IMG/VR virus record: IMGVR_UViG_3300032322_002561
Location: 124,001-188,000 of that record
Reading direction: 5' to 3' (one strand)
DNA: 64,000 nt
Shown here: positions 30,782 through 60,042 of the stretch, piece after piece
Numbering within the stretch: the stretch's first letter is position 1
Layout of the letters: each line of letters begins with the position of its first letter
The notes under the pieces: model-generated
Told to the model about the DNA's origin: nothing
What the model saw: the letters and a program-made list of their open reading frames with translations, nothing else
The model's database searches: none
Translations under genes and position numbers: made by a program

Positions 30782-31124
30782 TTTTTACTTCCTGTGTTAA
30801 ACGTTTGTTTTGAGACAACTGATCCGACAACTTCTTGTTGGCTTCAGCACTTTGTTTCTCTGCCGTGGCGACCCGGGCTTCTAGTTCCTTCACACGCTCG
30901 CGCCAACTACGTTCTACATCAGCGCCGCCCTTGAAGTACACACCTAATACTAAACATACAACTCCGATGAGCTGTATGGGTCCGCGATATAAATTAAAAT
31001 AAGGTACCCAGCGAGCAATCCATGAAGCACTGATGCCCACCAGACCCACTATGATCAGACCATTGACTAAAACAGTGATCAGCCAGTCAGGTATCAAACT
31101 CCAAAGGAACGCCAGTTGCCACAT
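30597..31124 (-). CDS. i-spanin (Rz-like)
   Basis: N-terminal TM helices, coiled coil, C-terminal Cys; directly after endolysin. Confidence 0.75.
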   Translation of the reverse strand: MWQLAFLWSLIPDWLITVLVNGLIIVGLVGISASWIARWVPYFNLYRGPIQLIGVVCLVLGVYFKGGADVERSWRERVKELEARVATAEKQSAEANKKLSDQLSQNKRLTQEVKNANQAAIRANASKIDAECRVPDVAIELLNSASQNKVSGSSTGTTGTLPRPSTSQPTRPPAK

Positions 31125-31750
31125 CAGTGACCACCAAATACTTCTAGGGCATGAGCATAGTGTTTCATTCTATCCTCAAGGCCAATGGTTCCCCCGTTTA
31201 TTCTTTTTGTCATTGTGAGAATATCGTTTGTGTCAGCAAAACGATTTAAGTTGTTGGTTTCCCAGAACCAGCAGGCACTTTGTACTGCGCCTTCAAAGGT
31301 TTCTAGATATGCAGCGGCTTCCTCTACAGGTGTTTCAATACTTTCGGCAAAATTTTCATAATTGCTCTTGCCTGTGAGCTGTATGAGTCCACGTCCGCAA
31401 TATCTGTAGCCATCGCCTGAGGCTTCGTCGCCGTTGCCCATCCTATTGGCATAGATACGGTTGGCTATGGCTTCGGCCTTGTTGGGCAAGCTGGCATATT
31501 GATTGGCCAGCTCATCTGTGGGGAAATACTTGGGAAATATTTTACGCAGGCTGGCCGCACGATAATTCAAATTTTCTTTAAGGAACATGAATCCGCCCGA
31601 CTCATGCGCACACTGGGCCAAAAAGGCAGCCACACGCTGTGGCGTGTCAATACCATAATCAGGTAACAATTTGTTTAGTGCGTCACACCATTGATCAATG
31701 TAGGGATTTTTGGGTATGATCTGTGCCAGTTGTTCACGGGTAATTTGCAT
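31124..31750 (-). CDS. glycoside hydrolase family 19 endolysin
   Basis: AFLAQCAHES, ENLNY, GRGLIQLTG, TKRINGG. Confidence 0.92.
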   Translation of the reverse strand: MQITREQLAQIIPKNPYIDQWCDALNKLLPDYGIDTPQRVAAFLAQCAHESGGFMFLKENLNYRAASLRKIFPKYFPTDELANQYASLPNKAEAIANRIYANRMGNGDEASGDGYRYCGRGLIQLTGKSNYENFAESIETPVEEAAAYLETFEGAVQSACWFWETNNLNRFADTNDILTMTKRINGGTIGLEDRMKHYAHALEVFGGH

Positions 31751-33342: not shown

Positions 33343-33918
33343 TTAAAAGTTAATGCCGGCTGCGGATTTTAATTCTTCAATTTCGGGTGTAGTTTTGGTG
33401 TAGATCTTTTTTGTTTCTAATCCAGCAGCTTCGCGAATTTCGTTGAGATCTTTTTCTTTTTTCATTCTATAACTATCTGGGGTCAGTGGTACCGTGGCAG
33501 AAAATGATTCTTCACTAAATGGGATAGTTTTGCCTTGATAGTGTATCATCCAATCGTCTGGTTGAAATTCGGTCAATGTGCTCAAATCGTCCACGAGCTC
33601 AAACACATTTTTTGCAGCCGCAGTTCTACGACGTATTTCTACATACACCAAATATCGGCCAGGTTTTATTTCGCCTGGGCTGACTTCAGAATCCAACACA
33701 AAGTCATAGCCTTTTTCAAACCAGCTCATGAGATCTCGAGCTGCCTGTTTGTCACGAACAAAAAAACTCAGCACAATGATGTCTTCGTCGTCGCCCATTT
33801 TGGAACTGAATTCGTCCACGTGAATAGTTGACTTCATGATTCCATCAAGATCTTTGTACTGCAATCCCTCTAACAAGGATTCAGAATTATTGTGCCTGTT
33901 GTAAATTTTGTTGTGCAT
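33343..33918 (-). CDS. hypothetical phage protein
   Basis: Long ORF coupled to upstream gene; start uncertain. Confidence 0.65.
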   Translation of the reverse strand: MHNKIYNRHNNSESLLEGLQYKDLDGIMKSTIHVDEFSSKMGDDEDIIVLSFFVRDKQAARDLMSWFEKGYDFVLDSEVSPGEIKPGRYLVYVEIRRRTAAAKNVFELVDDLSTLTEFQPDDWMIHYQGKTIPFSEESFSATVPLTPDSYRMKKEKDLNEIREAAGLETKKIYTKTTPEIEELKSAAGINF

Positions 33919-34453
33919 CTTGTGCCTGTTCATCGCTTTGATATTCTTGTTTGTCTAGATCCTGCTCGTAGGCATCGTCTAGATCCTTCAAATCAATTTC
34001 TTGATCTTCCATTTCAATTGAGCCGGTCCGAATTTCGCTCATGAGCCGTTTGGGCATGACAATTTCTACAAGCCAAACATTTTTTTCAATAATTCTAGCC
34101 TTGTGGGTGCCAGGAATGTAGTCACTGGGATCTGTGATCTTGATAGGTATTTTAATCTTGTTTTTCTTGTATTGTACTTCGCAATCAAAAGGCAATAATC
34201 TACGTCCACCGCGTGGATCGGGCATGAGTTTTTCAGGCCACATAAAAATACAAGTCACGCGATATTTGTCAATCTGGGGACCAGACACTAGCTCGCCAAT
34301 TTCCCAGTTTTTGTAGGCATAGATATCTAGTTCGTCCAATACTCGTTCAAAGTCCAAGAGAGTGGTCAGACTTCCATCGCTCATGTAAATGTCACGAATG
34401 TTATCGGCCACCTGCCAGTAATCTTCGTGATTTTTGAATATCTCTTTGTCCAT
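33887..34453 (-). CDS. hypothetical phage protein (MDKEIF...)
   Basis: TATAAATA 5 nt before ATG 34453. Confidence 0.7.
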   Translation of the reverse strand: MDKEIFKNHEDYWQVADNIRDIYMSDGSLTTLLDFERVLDELDIYAYKNWEIGELVSGPQIDKYRVTCIFMWPEKLMPDPRGGRRLLPFDCEVQYKKNKIKIPIKITDPSDYIPGTHKARIIEKNVWLVEIVMPKRLMSEIRTGSIEMEDQEIDLKDLDDAYEQDLDKQEYQSDEQAQDAQQNLQQAQ

Positions 34454-34621
34454 GCAATTATTTATACAGGATGCACAAGCTGGCAAGTTAGTGGAAAAAT
34501 GCCCTGGTCAATATTTATTGTTAAAAAATAAAAAATTCAACTGTGATTGATTTTGCATGTGTTTGATCGTAAATATCTTGGTCCAAAGTCTGGGCAATCA
34601 AACACACAAGGAGAATAGCTC

Positions 34622-50704: not shown

Positions 50705-52735
50705 ATGTCATATATCATTAATAACAGTCGGGGTCAGGTTGTAGCTGTCGTTGCAGACGGCACTATCAATACTTCTGCCACCAGTTTGGCACTTGTGGGA
50801 CGTGCTGTCAGCGGTTATGGCACCAGTGAAAATGAAAATTACTTGTTTTTGTTGGAGAATTTTGCCAATTCCACCGAGCCCAACAACCCAATTCTAGGAC
50901 AACTATGGTACAATTCCAGTACCGATATTCTAAGCGTGTATGCCAGTGATAACAACTGGGCGGCTTTGGCCAGTGAACAGTACGTGGAAGATTCCAAAAT
51001 TTCGCCAATATTTACAGGCATACCCGAAGCACCCACAGCGGCCCCTGGCACTGCTACAACACAGATTGCAACCACGGCTTTTGTGACCTCAAGTCCGCAA
51101 TTTTTGGGAGTGCCACGAGCACCCACTGCCGTGGCCGGTACTGCTAACACACAAATAGCCACCACAGCCTTTGTCACAAACAGCCCACAACTGGCAGGCA
51201 CACCCACAGCACCCACAGCGGTTCCCGGAACCAATACCGCACAGATAGCCACCACAGCGTTTGTGACATCGGGTCCAGATTTTGCTGGCTCGCCCACAGC
51301 ACCCACACTGCCCACGGTAACCAACAGCACGCAGTTGGCCACTACAGCATTTGTGCAGAACAACAAAGTGAGTCCGGCCTTGTCGGGCACACCCACAGCA
51401 CCCACCGCCTCAGCAGGTACAAATACCACACAGATAGCCACCACGGCCTTTGTGCAAGGTGAAAAAGTCAGTCCAGCCTTTTCTGGCACACCCACAGCAC
51501 CCACAGCGGCTCCTGGAACCAATACCACACAGATAGCCACCACAGCTTTTGTGCAAGATGTGGCAGGAAACTTGGGCACCATGAGCACTCAGAATGCCAG
51601 TTCGGTCAACATCACTGGAGGCACCATTTCTGGCATCACACCTTTGCCTGTGTCGTCGGGCGGTACCGGTGCAAGTAACCCGGCTGGTGCACGAAGCAAC
51701 CTGGATCTTGGTACCATATCACAACAAAATGCCAACGCGGTGTCCATTTCAGGCGGGGAAATTACAGGTATTGTGGATCTATCTGTGGCCGATGGTGGAA
51801 CTGGTGCCAGCACAGCCGCTGGCGCACGTACCAATCTTGGGGTTGGAACGTTAGGCACACAAAATTTCAACAATGTAAACATCACTGGCGGAACAATTAC
51901 AGGTATTTCGCCCTTGCCGTTATCTGCAGGCGGCACAGGCGCACCCAATGCCGCACAGGCCAGAACCAATCTTGGACTGGGCGACTTGGCCACCCAATCT
52001 GCCAATAATGTATCAATTTCTGGTGGAGTCATAGAAGGAGTAAATTTACAAAATCTTGCTGGTCCTTTAGACATCATCTGCGGCGGTACAGGTGCAATCA
52101 ACGTGGTGCAGGCTCGCCTTAATTTAGGTCTTGATTCAATGTCCTTGCAGGCCAGCAACGCCGTCAACATCACCGGTGGTAACATCAGCGGTATCAATCC
52201 CTTGCCCATTTTGTCAGGTGGCACTGGAGCTTCAACAGTGGTGCAAGCACGTACTAATCTAGGTCTTGGCAGCATGGCCTTGCAAAACAGTAGCAACGTC
52301 AGCATTGGTGGCGGATTTATCAACACCTTGAGTGCGCCTTTGAACATTGCAGATGGTGGTACTGGAGCCACCACAGCTGAGCAGGCTAGAAACAATCTTG
52401 GACTAGGTACAGGCGCCACCGCCAATATTGGTACCATGGCTGGTCAAAATCAAAATGCAGTAACAATAACCGGCGGAACCATTGCTGGCATCACAGATCT
52501 TGCTGTGGCCGATGGCGGCACAGGTGCTTCTAGTGCTTCACAAGCAAGAATCAATTTGGGAGTACCGTCAACTGGTATTACAATATCGGCTGGCGCAGGT
52601 TTGTCGGGCGGTGGAGACCTAAGTGCCAACCGCACCTTAAGCATTGCATCAAACAGCAACGGATTTGGTGTTAGATACATTTCACCAGCATCGCCCACGG
52701 GTGGTAACAACGGCGATATCTGGTATCAGATTTAA
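50705..52735 (+). CDS. tail fibre protein
   Basis: N-terminal ENFA...P..GQLWY; about 7 PTAPTA..GTNTTQIATTAFV repeats; about 7 GGTGA...ARxNLGLG repeats; GDIWY end. Confidence 0.85.
   Translation: MSYIINNSRGQVVAVVADGTINTSATSLALVGRAVSGYGTSENENYLFLLENFANSTEPNNPILGQLWYNSSTDILSVYASDNNWAALASEQYVEDSKISPIFTGIPEAPTAAPGTATTQIATTAFVTSSPQFLGVPRAPTAVAGTANTQIATTAFVTNSPQLAGTPTAPTAVPGTNTAQIATTAFVTSGPDFAGSPTAPTLPTVTNSTQLATTAFVQNNKVSPALSGTPTAPTASAGTNTTQIATTAFVQGEKVSPAFSGTPTAPTAAPGTNTTQIATTAFVQDVAGNLGTMSTQNASSVNITGGTISGITPLPVSSGGTGASNPAGARSNLDLGTISQQNANAVSISGGEITGIVDLSVADGGTGASTAAGARTNLGVGTLGTQNFNNVNITGGTITGISPLPLSAGGTGAPNAAQARTNLGLGDLATQSANNVSISGGVIEGVNLQNLAGPLDIICGGTGAINVVQARLNLGLDSMSLQASNAVNITGGNISGINPLPILSGGTGASTVVQARTNLGLGSMALQNSSNVSIGGGFINTLSAPLNIADGGTGATTAEQARNNLGLGTGATANIGTMAGQNQNAVTITGGTIAGITDLAVADGGTGASSASQARINLGVPSTGITISAGAGLSGGGDLSANRTLSIASNSNGFGVRYISPASPTGGNNGDIWYQI
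51010..51560 (+). repeat. coding tandem repeats (about 90-100 bp unit) in tail fibre
   Basis: Recurrent gcacccacagc and acagatagccaccacagc. Confidence 0.8.
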
Positions 52736-54970: not shown

Positions 54971-55189
54971 TTACCTACGGCGTGTGACCCTGCCACGGGT
55001 GAGATCATATGGACTGAATTCTATTTCAACGCGATCTCCCAGGAGTATTTTGATGTTGTGCTGTCGCATCTTGCCAGAAATCACACCAGTTACCAAGGTA
55101 TCACTCACATCTAATTTGATTCTAAACATGGCATTGGGCAAAACATCTACCACAGTGCCTTCCATTTTGAAACCTTCTTCTTTGGCCAT
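54971..55189 (-). CDS. infA: translation initiation factor IF-1
   Basis: MAKEE...LPNAMFR...[22 protein letters not shown]. Confidence 0.97.
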
Positions 55190-57164: not shown

Positions 57165-57479
57165 TTATTTGAACAGGATCATGGCCATGATAACCGCCTG
57201 GGTTATAAAGCCCAAGCCAATGGTTATGATGTTCAGCATGTCACGCTGGACTACTGCACGGAAGAACAACAAGATCAGGCCGGCCCACATGAACAACACA
57301 ATGTCTAGATTTGGAACAGTGTCCGAAAGTCCTGTGAGCAAGGCCAGTAGTGTGGGTATGGTGGCACAGTGTATGACCACTACTGCCAACCAGCCCAGAG
57401 TTTCAGCACTTACTTTGGGCAAGTGTTGTTCTAACCAGGTTCTTGAAGAATTCAACCAAGCGTCTAATTTGATTATCAT
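57165..57479 (-). CDS. membrane protein
   Basis: Three hydrophobic helices. Confidence 0.7.
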   Translation of the reverse strand: MIIKLDAWLNSSRTWLEQHLPKVSAETLGWLAVVVIHCATIPTLLALLTGLSDTVPNLDIVLFMWAGLILLFFRAVVQRDMLNIITIGLGFITQAVIMAMILFK

Positions 57480-57481
57480 GT

Positions 57482-58042
57482 TTAGATTTTTTCCGCATAA
57501 AAAATGTGTCTCCCAAATTTACCTACCACGGGTTTGCCCCATTGTGGTTTCACATAGTCTGCATGAAAATAAAGTGCGTTTTTCATGCTGGGCAGTCTGA
57601 AACCTTCTAGTAGGACCTTTTTCGCTACTTCTTCTGCTTCTTTCCAGTGTGCTGGATATATGGGTCGGATCTTGCTGGATCCATCACAGAACCAGGAAAA
57701 CTGACATACTACCTTGTCATACACAATGTTCTTTTGATAAACCACACCGCAGATGTCTCGGGCAAAACGTCCCGACTCCACACGGTTGATGGTGACCTGT
57801 GCCACAGCGACCTTGCCTTCAAAGGGCTCGGTTGCGGCTTCCCAGTAGATGTTGCGTGTCAAGCAATCCAACTGCTTGGCTCGATCAGCGGCACTGACAA
57901 AGCCTTGACGTGCCGCTTCGTTGGTGGCACGCAGAGTTTCTAATTTTGTGTCGGTGACAAACAGCACTGCCACGACCACGGCCATGAAACTGATGGCCTT
58001 TACTACTATACTGCCTAGATTGGACTTTGAAGTTGCCTTCAT
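57482..58042 (-). CDS. SleB/Hydrolase_2 cell wall hydrolase with N-terminal membrane anchor
   Basis: CLTRNIYWEA, VAQVTINRV, CQFSW, ALYFHADYV.P.W, HIFY. Confidence 0.9.
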   Translation of the reverse strand: MKATSKSNLGSIVVKAISFMAVVVAVLFVTDTKLETLRATNEAARQGFVSAADRAKQLDCLTRNIYWEAATEPFEGKVAVAQVTINRVESGRFARDICGVVYQKNIVYDKVVCQFSWFCDGSSKIRPIYPAHWKEAEEVAKKVLLEGFRLPSMKNALYFHADYVKPQWGKPVVGKFGRHIFYAEKI

Positions 58043-58321
58043 AGTTTTCTCCCGTCAGCTTAGTGAGCTGTTCACCGGAGTGCCCAGGATGGGCGCATTG
58101 ACAAAGATTTGGGCAAAAGAAAAGACCTCGGGCCTCCTTTGGCATACTCTCCGAGCGCGGCTTTGTTTCTCACCGGGCCTGTACCATTTGTCAATGAAGA
58201 GGATTTCCGAAGTCCTCTTTGATCAGCTTTGCGGCACTGACCGATCCGTTGTGGAGTAGAAGTTGGGTGTAATCCTCCGCTGATCGATTCTACGACAGCC
58301 TGAACTGGTGTTCTACTCCAT
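58043..58321 (-). ncRNA. about 280-nt structured 5' leader RNA of the cell wall hydrolase
   Basis: 10-bp stems 58311-58320/58252-58261 and 58187-58196/58096-58105; hairpin 58197-58219; SD-pairing stem 58049-58080. Confidence 0.6.
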
Positions 58322-58422
58322 AAAATACTTAGTAACTGATCAATATCAGAAACAAATAAAGTCATTTTTTTAACACTTTTTACCATAATATACACATATT
58401 ATAGCACGACTAAGTTTTAAAG

Positions 58423-58749
58423 TCAATCTCGTTCAATTAGATGTCTTTTTTGCTCGATCTTACTCCAATGATCAGCATCAGGCAAAGCATCAACTCGTTT
58501 GGTCATAGACGGCCATAATTGAGCTAACTCTGCATTGAGCGCAATAAATTCTTGTTGATCTCCAGGAACATCATCTTCGGCATAAATCGCATTTACTGGA
58601 CATTCTGGTACGCAAACAGCACAATCGATACACTCGTTGGGATCAATTACAAGAAAATTTGGCCCTGCTCGAAAACAATCTACTGGACACACATCTACAC
58701 AATCAGTGTAACGGCATTTGACACAGGCTTCGGTTACAACAAAAGTCAT
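58423..58749 (-). CDS. fdxA: 7Fe ferredoxin FdxA
   Basis: [31 protein letters not shown]. Confidence 0.93.
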
Positions 58750-58750
58750 A

Positions 58751-59512
58751 TTACTCCTCGAATTTACAAACTGGGATTGGCGTCATTTTGTGCATGTTTT
58801 GGGCACGCAGTTCTCGATAACGTTTTAATTTTTTCCTGTCTTGTGGCGCGGCTCCAAATCCCGCCGCATCCAACTGCATCATGGTTTCCAGTTCAGGATA
58901 GGTCATGCCCAACTGATCTTCATCGGTGCGTCCATCAGCCCAGAGTCCGTCTGTGGGTGCGGCATCAATGATTTCCGGCATGATGCCAAGCTCGCGACCC
59001 ATGGACCATACGTCGGTCTTCATGCAGTCGCCAATGGGGCTGATGTCCACACCACCATCGCCATACTTGGTAAAAAAGCCCACACCAAAATCCTCGACCC
59101 GGTTACCGGTGCCAACAACAATGCCACTATTGCACTGTGCAATTTGATACAAGGTCATCATGCGTAATCGACTACGGCTGTTGGCAAAGGCCAACTCGTT
59201 GTCAAACACTGTGCCCATGGCTCGTTCAAATTGTTTAAAAGTAGGTGTAAGATCCAAGGTGTAGTTTTCAGCATTGGGATATTGTGTGGTCAACCAGTAA
59301 GCATGCCCTACGCTGAGTTCATGAGTGTGTTTGCTCTGTTTTATGGGCATGCACACAGCCATGGTAGGGATACCGGTGCGAGCACACAAGGTGGATACCA
59401 CAGCTGAGTCAATGCCGCCCGATACTCCCACCACAAGAGTTTTGATCTTGTTTTTGGTGGCGTAGCTTTTGATCCACTTTGTAATATAATTAATTCTTTG
59501 TTTGGGCGTCAT
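58751..59512 (-). CDS. nadE: NH3-dependent NAD+ synthetase
   Basis: [39 protein letters not shown]. Confidence 0.95.
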
Positions 59513-60042
59513 TCTATTTCTGGAGCGGGCATGGCTTTGATACGATCCCAAGTGGCCTGTTTATCCTTAATATGCTGTTCTAGCTTGCGATATTGTTCAC
59601 CCAGCTCACGCAGGTCCTCCCACTCCTTTTCCAATTCTGGATTGGGTTGGAACAGGCTCAAGCGTTCTTCGATCCTTTTGACCGCTGCTACCAGACTCCA
59701 GCCATTGACTTCTACATCAGCGCCTTCACCGTTGAGTTGGATTCGGCCGCTGGTAGGACTTTGTGTGAACCAAGGTGTTGCGTTGGTTCCAGTGGAGTAA
59801 ATGGTGTTGGACAACGAAAGATTACCAAAGGTAACCGAAGGTGAAATACTGGCTCCAATAGCACCAGTCACAGTGTATGGACTGGTCAGGCTCATGTTGT
59901 CCAAAGCCGAGGTAATGGTTATGGTATCATTTGCAATGTCACTGGCAGTGGGAGTGCTCTCGTACAAGGCAAAGTTGTTGTTTAGGTCCCACTCCTTGAC
60001 AATTTCCTCCAAGCGAGTGGGTGCAGATATTTTGGGTTCCAT
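59509..60042 (-). CDS. hypothetical protein
   Basis: ORF overlapping both neighbours. Confidence 0.7.
   Translation of the reverse strand: MEPKISAPTRLEEIVKEWDLNNNFALYESTPTASDIANDTITITSALDNMSLTSPYTVTGAIGASISPSVTFGNLSLSNTIYSTGTNATPWFTQSPTSGRIQLNGEGADVEVNGWSLVAAVKRIEERLSLFQPNPELEKEWEDLRELGEQYRKLEQHIKDKQATWDRIKAMPAPEIE

What the first reader, a model, noticed from the sequence alone, without database searches (positions are those of the whole stretch)
58043..58426. 280-nt multi-stem leader with alternative pairings that may control a cell-wall hydrolase
Seen: a late-type TAAGTA (58331-58326) is followed by ATG-GAG-TAG (58321-58313), which lies in the 5' arm of a 10-bp stem. GAUCAGC in that loop (58285-58279) can pair with GCUGAUC (58227-58221), in competition with local GAUCGGU (58246-58240). 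Next come a 7-bp hairpin, a 10-bp-closed domain carrying AGGCCCG twice, and a last stem pairing CUCC (58080-58077) with the hydrolase SD GGAG (58052-58049). A sigma70-like TTGACT-17-TATAAT promoter (58426-58398) gives a longer transcript with an open frame ending at 58072, inside the SD stem. Inference: a riboswitch-like or ribosome-triggered RNA timer for a membrane-anchored muralytic enzyme.
Basis: partly seen in the sequence, partly recalled or inferred. Interest (0 to 1): 0.75.

Follow-up and report, generated by a model that had tools for sequence, protein, structure and literature searches.

The report
Structured leader RNA of phage hydrolase
A roughly 270-nt, highly conserved RNA leader with two pseudoknots sits in front of a membrane-anchored cell-wall hydrolase gene in a family of uncultivated freshwater jumbo phages; it matches no known RNA family and most likely gates translation of that enzyme.

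Summary
The region is real and is an RNA element, not a protein. The window is part of a 236-kb IMG/VR jumbo-phage record. At least 120 distinct versions of the leader exist in viral and freshwater metagenome contigs. In 141 of 142 testable loci a Hydrolase_2 (SleB-type) gene follows directly, even where that protein is only about 30% identical. Compensatory changes support eleven helices: P1, P2, P3, Pa, Pb and Pc, hairpin Pf, and two H-type pseudoknots. The second pseudoknot ends 2-4 nt before the Shine-Dalgarno sequence. A six-pair loop-loop contact (Pa loop with Pd) is also likely. An invariant UCC(G) can pair with the SD, but without covariation. Rfam 15 has no match in the window or in 20 related loci. 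The 107-codon frame shows no codon periodicity, its indels break the frame, and it is kept in only 48 of 113 variants. Both promoters are supported. TAAGTA matches a T4-late-like TAA[AG]TA motif found before structural genes and is present in 112 of 112 leaders. My best reading is a new cis-acting translational control leader with an aptamer-like core. Its effector is unknown.

The parts
58398..58426 (-). Sigma70-like promoter TTGACT-17-TATAAT with an extended -10 TG
   Evidence: 11 of 12 matches. TTGAC-N16-19-TAnnnT is found 60-70 nt before TAAGTA in 66 of 112 relatives within the 260 nt examined.
58326..58331 (-). TAAGTA, a late-promoter-like element just 5' of the structured RNA
   Evidence: Present in 112 of 112 full-length leaders, including those without the 5' domain. 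TAA[AG]TA is 5.5-fold enriched in the 150 nt before genes of this genome, peaks at -10 to -40, and precedes tail-fibre and virion genes.
58253..58319 (-). P1 (58319-58311 with 58261-58253), which encloses P2 and the conserved junction GGAGGAUUACA (58278-58268)
   Evidence: 7 bp conserved; two positions change on both sides in 3 lineages.
58279..58299 (-). P2 hairpin with one bulged base on the 3' arm
   Evidence: Pair types GC48/AT31, AT33/TA28/GT10 and CG72/TA9. There are 59 double-change cells against 26 in shuffles.
58221..58249 (-). P3 hairpin (58242-58237 with 58226-58221), with conserved loop UGCCGYAAAG. Pseudoknot PK1 pairs ACGG (58249-58246) with loop CCGC (58234-58231).
   Evidence: P3 covaries at 4 positions. 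PK1 has CG80/GC2 and GC81/AT1, with no unpaired cell in its 3 core pairs.
58197..58219 (-). Pa hairpin AAGAGGA[CUUCGGAAA]UCCUCUU
   Evidence: 99.9% paired in 119 unique sequences; pair types GC95/AT22 and AT89/CG24.
58096..58196 (-). Pb, the closing helix of the central three-way domain (58196-58187 with 58105-58096)
   Evidence: 8 core pairs; position 2 shows AT87/GC14/GT11.
58152..58181 (-). Pc hairpin, 9-10 bp, with conserved loop (A)GAAACAAA
   Evidence: 33 extra pair types and 236 double-change cells against 94 in shuffles. RNAalifold also predicts it.
58113..58143 (-). Pe (58143-58136 with 58120-58113) carrying the invariant Pd element AGGCCCGAGGUCU (58135-58123). CCGAGG of Pd is complementary to the Pa loop CUUCGG.
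   Evidence: Pe was found by eye as two alternative sequence types and was not tested statistically. The Pa loop can form 6 pairs with Pd in 113 of 119 sequences, and U.G becomes G.U in 5.
58082..58094 (-). Pf hairpin GCCCA[UCC]UGGGC
   Evidence: Pair types CG20/UA9/UG4 and CG28/UA3.
58077..58080 (-). Anti-SD CUCC (UCCG is invariant)
   Evidence: 99% pairable with the SD but invariant, so covariation gives no support for or against.
58056..58075 (-). H-type pseudoknot PK2. S1 is GUGA:UCAC (58075-58072 with 58066-58063). S2 is CAGC:GCUG (58070-58067 with 58059-58056).
   Evidence: the S1 outer pair is CG20/GC13 with none unpaired, and all four S2 pairs covary; a strict pseudoknot is found in 90 of 123 sequences against 2% of shuffles, with 17 distinct S2 5' arms.
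58040..58052 (-). SD GGAG (58052-58049) and the start codon (58042-58040; ATG here)
   Evidence: The spacer from S2 to GGA is 2-4 nt in 88 of 90 sequences. Start codons are TTG 60, ATG 44, GTG 5.
57482..58042 (-). Hydrolase_2 (SleB-type) gene with an N-terminal hydrophobic anchor
   Evidence: Pfam PF07486, E 2e-24. PHROG endolysin families. Present downstream of the leader in 141 of 142 loci.

Best explanation
Window 58319-58040 (minus strand) encodes the 5' leader of the hydrolase mRNA. It is a conserved, modular, tertiary-folded RNA that acts in cis on translation initiation.

Shown:
- An optional 5' domain (P1, P2, P3 with pseudoknot PK1).
- An obligatory core: Pa, then a three-way domain Pb/Pc/Pe-Pd. 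Its loops and junctions are invariant.
- A hairpin Pf and a second pseudoknot PK2 at a fixed 2-4 nt before the SD.

Likely but not tested beyond pairing counts: a six-pair contact between the Pa loop and Pd.

Inferred:
- The core behaves like an aptamer for an unknown effector, which could be a metabolite, a phage or host protein, or the ribosome.
- Its state decides whether the invariant UCC(G) next to PK2 pairs with the SD GGAG (off) or leaves it free (on).
- This limits or times synthesis of an exported, potentially lethal muralytic enzyme that usually starts at a weak TTG codon.
- Transcription most likely starts a few bases after the late-type TAAGTA. The sigma70-like promoter adds a longer early transcript.
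For: - More than 120 distinct relatives, found only in viral and freshwater metagenome contigs. One copy per genome.
- The leader is more conserved than the gene: 25% against 37% of sites differ.
- The downstream gene is always Hydrolase_2 (141 of 142 loci), including 36 loci with only 28-40% identity, while the upstream neighbour varies.
- Covariation exceeds shuffled and slid controls in every helix tested.
- G.U pairs outnumber A.C by 295 to 76, so the folded strand is the mRNA strand.
- No terminator-like site lies between the RNA and the gene.
- The pseudoknot-to-SD spacing is fixed.
- UCCG and GGAG are invariant and complementary.
- TAAGTA is present in 112 of 112 leaders at the 5' edge of the structure.
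- Contigs from four metatranscriptome runs cover the leader, and none extends beyond TAAGTA. This is weak evidence.
Against: - The anti-SD:SD helix has only 3-4 pairs (2-3 in the 'group B' variants) and no covariation.
- In a classical H-type pseudoknot the two ends lie far apart, so it is unclear whether the anti-SD helix and PK2 coexist or exclude each other.
- No conserved pair of mutually exclusive structures was found.
- The element occurs before one gene family in one phage lineage, which is unlike most metabolite riboswitches.
- A close relative (L013, 67% identical hydrolase) does without it.
- The phage also has a soluble GH19 endolysin, so control of this enzyme need not set lysis time.
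- There is no transcript mapping and no binding data.
Confidence: 0.6

Rival explanations
1. A constitutive structural leader. The fold does not switch. Instead it protects the late mRNA from 5' decay or processing, or presents the SD and weak TTG start in a fixed geometry that sets a low, constant translation rate.
For: No conserved alternative structure was found: reject the two candidates tested. The spacing of PK2 to the SD is fixed. The start codon is weak in 60 of 109 leaders.
Against: Invariant loops and junctions, and a tertiary contact, are more than a stabiliser needs. The invariant anti-SD right next to the SD suggests occlusion.
Confidence: 0.2
2. Promoter-dependent temporal control of the T4 gene e type. 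Early transcripts from the sigma70-like promoter carry about 70 extra 5' nucleotides that lock the leader off. Late transcripts from TAAGTA fold into the translatable form.
For: Both promoters are conserved, and so is the segment between them. T4 lysozyme is controlled this way (PMC3014915).
Against: In T4 the late promoters lie inside the inhibitory hairpin, next to the ribosome binding site. Here the late-type site is 285 nt upstream, so both transcripts contain the anti-SD and the whole fold. I saw no conserved complementarity between the early-only segment and the leader by eye, but I did not test this systematically.
Confidence: 0.12
3. A separate or processed non-coding RNA that acts in trans and is kept next to the hydrolase gene only by synteny.
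For: Three of the four metatranscriptome contigs (204-225 nt) stop before the SD. The sequence conservation is very high.
Against: There is no terminator. The conserved structure runs up to the SD. The leader stays linked even where the hydrolase belongs to a different subfamily and the upstream genes differ. The contigs were found through the most conserved words, so where they end says little.
Confidence: 0.06
4. The 107-codon frame (58395-58072) is a real small protein, or a translated upstream ORF coupled to the hydrolase start.
For: Databases hold 405 predicted 'hypothetical proteins' of 78-122 aa (among the 120 listed) that match it. One frame is poor in stops: 30% of leaders have a stop-free frame against 2% of shuffles. 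In 19 variants the stop overlaps the start as UUGA.
Against: - Substitution rates are flat across codon positions (0.247/0.252/0.258, against 0.314/0.268/0.530 in the hydrolase).
- Only 36 of 487 indels keep the frame, against 145 of 197 in the gene.
- The frame runs through in 48 of 113 variants, stops within 15 codons in 35, and has ACG in place of a start in 17. Its end varies from -34 to +29.
- Invariant bases are read in different frames in different relatives.
- No Pfam or PHROG match.
- The late transcript would lack the start codon.
Confidence: 0.02

Closest known systems
T4 gene e (lysozyme) leader, and the similar cases soc, 49 and I-TevI
   Same: A phage muralytic enzyme whose ribosome binding site can be paired within its own leader. 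Early-type and late-type (TATAAATA-like) promoters both feed the gene (PMC3014915).
   Different: T4 uses one simple hairpin, and the late promoters lie inside it so that late mRNA lacks the inhibitory arm. Here there is a 270-nt multi-domain fold with two pseudoknots, and it is entirely included in the late-type transcript.
Riboswitches built from a multi-helix junction closed by a loop-loop contact, with an SD-occluding expression platform (purine, lysine, cobalamin classes; from general knowledge)
   Same: Covarying helices around invariant junctions and loops, a long-range loop contact, and an SD-proximal platform with an anti-SD.
   Different: No sequence or structure match to any Rfam class. 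No ligand is known. It occurs before a single gene family in a single phage lineage.
Small H-type pseudoknot riboswitches (preQ1-I, SAM-II, guanidine-III; from general knowledge)
   Same: A compact H-type pseudoknot immediately 5' of the SD.
   Different: In those classes the pseudoknot is the whole aptamer and usually contains the SD. Here S2 ends 2-4 nt before the SD, its sequence varies freely, and it is only the last module of a much larger RNA. There was no Rfam hit even at E up to 10.
Protein-dependent translational operators with pseudoknots (T4 gene 32, E. coli rpsO/S15, alpha-operon/S4; from general knowledge)
   Same: A pseudoknot close to the ribosome binding site in a leader that controls one gene.
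   Different: No candidate binding protein has been identified. The leader is kept while the downstream protein is exchanged for a 30%-identical one, which argues against simple autoregulation through a variable part of the hydrolase.
ydaO (c-di-AMP) riboswitch, known to precede cell-wall hydrolase genes in bacteria (from general knowledge)
   Same: A structured, pseudoknotted leader before a cell-wall hydrolase.
   Different: No match to RF00379 or any other family in a permissive scan. The architecture differs.

Membership tests
Any Rfam 15 family (4227 models, including all curated riboswitch, ribozyme, tmRNA, RNase P and 6S families) | Score at or above the family's gathering threshold | tested here: not met
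   No match in the 64-kb window. The only match in 20 related or comparison loci was one tRNA elsewhere in a locus. The permissive scan of the region gave only noise (best E 0.13, bits far below threshold). ARAGORN found no tRNA or tmRNA.
Conserved structured RNA (generic) | Helices kept through compensatory changes beyond what shuffled and slid controls give | tested here: met
   93.5% paired against 81.7% shuffled and 30-43% slid; 76 double-change cells against 27.5; every helix exceeds all shuffles in double-change cells. No phylogeny-aware test (R-scape) was available.
Cis-regulatory 5' leader | Constant position and orientation directly upstream of one gene family, with no terminator between them | tested here: met
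   141 of 142 loci. The start codon lies about 170-190 nt after the Pa motif in the first 48 loci. No terminator-like site.
Riboswitch | Direct binding of a small ligand that changes the expression platform | not testable with these tools
   Only the anatomy could be examined (aptamer-like core plus an anti-SD platform).
Riboswitch | Two conserved, mutually exclusive structures | tested here: inconclusive
Anti-SD:SD against PK2 may be exclusive on geometric grounds, but this is inference only.
T4 gene e type control | Late promoter located inside the inhibitory structure, so that the late mRNA lacks its 5' arm | tested here: not met
   TAAGTA lies 5' of the whole fold, 285 nt before the start codon. 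No TAA[AG]TA-like motif is conserved between the anti-SD and the SD.
Protein-coding gene (107-aa ORF) | Codon periodicity of substitutions, frame-preserving indels, and a conserved start and stop | tested here: not met
   No Pfam or PHROG family.
H-type pseudoknot | Two crossing helices, each supported by covariation, with short loops | tested here: met
   PK2. PK1: with three independent compensations but few in number.

The most novel reading that the evidence does not exclude
This is a new class of effector-sensing RNA switch carried by jumbo phages. Its kissing-loop three-way core would bind a small molecule or a phage or host factor that reports the state of the infected cell. Through the pseudoknot and anti-SD platform it would then decide when an exported cell-wall hydrolase is made.
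Probability: 0.3. Interest if true: 0.85.

Novelty: new variant of a known kind. Interest (0 to 1): 0.72.

Why it matters
Large, well-conserved RNAs with tertiary structure and no known family are rare. They have repeatedly turned out to be riboswitches or ribozymes. This one is abundant in lake viromes and has a clear genetic target, an exported muralytic enzyme. It is also short enough (a core of about 190 nt) for direct biochemistry.

If it senses something, it would show how uncultivated jumbo phages gate a dangerous enzyme at the level of translation, in a way that goes beyond the simple T4 hairpin. There is a practical point too. Gene callers currently annotate the leader as a 'hypothetical protein' in hundreds of records, which hides it from pipelines that search only intergenic regions for RNA.

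Tried and rejected
- Rfam at gathering and at permissive thresholds, on the window and on 20 loci: nothing.
- tRNA/tmRNA scan: nothing.
- blastn against 50,697 cultured phage records: no match.
- Bacterial genome collection: only two short MAG contigs hit the pattern, and one (L131) is a chance hit.
- Pf-region:Pd alternative pairing: not above shuffles, 5.2 against 4.7.
- Extended 9-bp GGACUUCGG:CCGAGGUCU duplex proposed by RNAalifold on one subgroup: the 'group B' variants compensate within the Pa hairpin instead, so I kept only the six-pair loop contact.
- A hairpin UCAUU[GACA]AAUGG predicted: broken in group B, whereas Pb is compensated.
- AGGCC-CGA-GGUCU plus a U run as a terminator: the U run is not conserved, and the scan lists no terminator.
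- Coding reading: rejected.
- A DNA-level element: rejected, because the G.U excess is strand-specific.
- A second copy in the genome: none.
- Whole-domain covariance models were not built. I avoided typing long structure strings and used scripts and a 62-column alignment instead.
- The supplementary tables of the IMG/VR candidate-RNA catalogue (PMC10690425) are not held, so I could not check whether fragments of this leader are listed there.

Full report
**Where it lies.** The window is bases 124001-188000 of a 236-kb IMG/VR virus record estimated to be 68% complete, so it is a jumbo phage. On the minus strand a ferredoxin gene (58749-58423) is followed by about 380 nt and then by a 186-aa Hydrolase_2/SleB-type protein (58042-57482). 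That protein has an N-terminal hydrophobic segment and matches PHROG endolysin families. The sigma70-like promoter scores 11 of 12 with an extended -10, and the strand folds better than shuffles (z = -2.47).

**Relatives.**
- A protein-guided search with the hydrolase found related loci, and blastn and nhmmer showed that the leader itself is conserved in the closest of them.
- A 23-base pattern taken from an invariant stretch then found 49 viral contigs, at least 120 metagenome contigs (mostly lake samples), and only two short MAG contigs among 185,579 prokaryote genomes. One of those two is a chance hit.
- This gave 124 unique versions of the 3' domain and 113 unique full-length leaders.
- In 141 of 142 loci with enough downstream sequence, a Hydrolase_2 gene follows on the same strand. 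In 36 of them the protein is only 28-40% identical and carries a signal peptide.
- The upstream neighbour varies: a 177-aa protein in 92 of 111 loci, NadE in 18 and ferredoxin in 3.
- The leader differs at 25% of sites among relatives, the gene at about 37%.
- There is one copy in the genome.

**Not a protein.** The 107-codon frame is what a gene caller would report. Databases indeed hold 405 matching 'hypothetical proteins'. The evidence against a coding role:
- Substitutions are flat across codon positions (0.247/0.252/0.258), whereas the hydrolase shows 0.314/0.268/0.530.
- Only 36 of 487 indels preserve the frame, against 145 of 197 in the gene.
- The frame runs from the conserved ATG-like site to the end of the leader in 48 of 113 variants. 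It stops within 15 codons in 35 and has ACG in place of a start in 17. It ends anywhere from -34 to +29 relative to the hydrolase start.
- Invariant bases such as AGGCCCGAGG are read in different frames in different relatives.
- One frame is poor in stops. The sequences are related, however, and the conserved blocks contain few stop triplets, so I do not read this as selection for translation.

**Structure.** Pairing counts on anchored extractions, with shuffled and slid controls, support these elements:
- P1, 7 bp.
- P2, with a bulged base.
- P3, with a conserved loop.
- A pseudoknot PK1 between ACGG and the P3 loop. It shows three independent compensations and no unpaired cell in its core pairs.
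- Pa, AAGAGGA[CUUCGGAAA]UCCUCUU.
- Pb, which closes a three-way domain.
- Pc, very variable in sequence but with a conserved GAAACAAA loop.

On a 62-column alignment (A4), the counting tool gave 93.5% paired cells, against 81.7% in shuffles and 30-43% when the partners were slid. It also gave a perfect C-G/G-C exchange in S1 and 3-4 pair types at every S2 pair. Hairpin Pf and an H-type pseudoknot PK2 are therefore well supported. A strict search finds such a pseudoknot in 90 of 123 leaders, against 2% of shuffles. It shows 17 different S2 5' arms, and S2 ends 2-4 nt before the SD in 88 of 90.

The Pa loop CUUCGG can form six pairs with CCGAGG of the invariant Pd element in 113 of 119 leaders, and five sequences show a U.G to G.U exchange. 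I read this as a loop-loop contact that closes the core.

G.U pairs outnumber A.C by 295 to 76, which fixes the folded strand as the mRNA strand.

The 5' domain (P1-P3) is missing in 8 of 112 leaders. Other lineages carry an extra hairpin, so the element is modular. Its obligatory core runs from Pa to the SD.

Pe was recognised only by eye, as two alternative sequence types.

**Promoters.**
- TAA[AG]TA occurs 64 times in the 150 nt before genes of this genome, against 11.7 expected. It peaks at -10 to -40 and precedes a tail-fibre gene, a virion protein gene and a soluble endolysin gene. It therefore looks like a T4-type late promoter.
- TAAGTA stands at the 5' edge of the structured RNA in 112 of 112 leaders, including those without the 5' domain.
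- The sigma70-like site lies 60-70 nt further upstream in at least 66 of them.
- Contigs from four metatranscriptome runs (relatives, 90-99% identical) cover 58091-58287. None reaches beyond TAAGTA, and one ends a few bases after it. This fits a start there. It is weak evidence, because these are assembled contigs picked up through the most conserved words, and DNA carry-over cannot be excluded.

**Mechanism.**

Shown:
- a conserved, tertiary-folded RNA tied to the hydrolase gene;
- no terminator-like site between the RNA and the gene;
- a fixed geometry between PK2 and the SD;
- an invariant UCC(G) that can pair with GGAG;
- a start codon that is TTG in 60 of 109 leaders.

Inferred: the core is an effector-binding or self-organising module, and its state controls whether the SD is occluded.

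The anti-SD helix is short and invariant, so it is not proven. In a classical H-type pseudoknot the 5' and 3' ends lie at opposite ends of the stacked helices, so the anti-SD helix and PK2 may be mutually exclusive. That would provide a switch, but this is reasoning and not data.

I found no conserved pair of alternative structures.

The T4 lysozyme paradigm (PMC3014915) is the nearest functional analogy. It differs in that the late-type promoter here lies upstream of the whole fold.

**Limits on the biological story.**
- The phage also encodes a soluble GH19-type endolysin with a short late leader. The leader-controlled enzyme is therefore not the only muralytic activity, and 'lysis timer' is not established.
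- A relative with a 67% identical hydrolase has only a 55-nt leader behind the same ACTAAGTAT motif.
- Other clades carry unrelated conserved leaders before their Hydrolase_2 genes, which are also absent from Rfam.
- Cultured phages have only distant hydrolase homologs, all under 60% identical and at most about 43% among the hits listed, annotated as endolysin, SleB or cell wall hydrolase. None has this leader.

**Novelty.** There is no Rfam 15 family, and literature searches found no description. A 2023 catalogue of 8,495 candidate RNAs from IMG/VR intergenic regions exists (PMC10690425), but its tables are not held. Its candidates are 29-151 nt long, and this region is often called as an ORF. 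At most fragments could be listed there, and I could not check.

I rate the element as a new variant of a known kind: a cis-acting structured leader with an SD-proximal platform. There is about a 0.3 chance that it is a genuinely new effector-sensing switch.

Noticed in passing
window 31124-31750 (-): A second muralytic gene: a soluble GH19-type endolysin (phrog_181, E 2e-77; Pfam Glyco_hydro_19) with no membrane segment. It has TAAATA 29 nt before its start, so it has an ordinary short late leader.
   Followed up: partly
whole genome G000; e.g. window 50705-52735 (+), 33887-34486 (-): TAA[AG]TA is 5.5-fold enriched in the 150 nt before genes, peaks at -10 to -40, and precedes tail-fibre and virion protein genes. 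It looks like a T4-type late promoter. I did not look for a gp55-like factor.
   Followed up: partly
window 58332-58397 (-): The segment between the sigma70-like promoter and TAAGTA is itself conserved. It holds ATGG[CT]AAAAA..ATCAAAAAT, an A-tract/U-tract hairpin, and a hairpin of variable sequence 5-8 nt before TAAGTA. Its role is unknown; it could be an operator, an attenuator or an early-transcript element.
   Followed up: no
L027, L028, L030 (about 230 nt before the hydrolase start); L015-L024 (about 100 nt): Other phage clades carry different conserved leaders before their Hydrolase_2 genes. The L027 type looks long and structured. None matches Rfam.
   Followed up: partly
window 54971-55189 (-): A phage-encoded translation initiation factor IF-1 (Pfam PF01176, E 7e-19) lies 2.3 kb downstream of the hydrolase. 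This is notable next to a gene family that mostly starts at TTG, but I tested no link.
   Followed up: partly
window 58423-59551 (-): In this phage, ferredoxin and NadE genes sit between the usual upstream neighbour (the 177-aa protein at 59509-60042) and the leader. Only 3 and 18 of 111 relatives respectively have them there, so this looks like an insertion of auxiliary metabolic genes.
   Followed up: partly
window 58072-58395 (-) and 405 database entries: Public protein collections hold hundreds of 'hypothetical proteins' that are translations of this RNA leader.
   Followed up: yes
window 58091-58287: Short contigs (204-311 nt) in four metatranscriptome runs from three studies cover just the leader of relatives. 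Three of them end before the SD. This may hint at a stable leader fragment, or may only reflect how the runs were found.
   Followed up: partly
window 57165-57479 (-): A 104-aa protein with several hydrophobic segments follows the hydrolase in 84 of 111 relatives. It has no Pfam or PHROG match. It could be a holin-like partner, but this was not tested.
   Followed up: no
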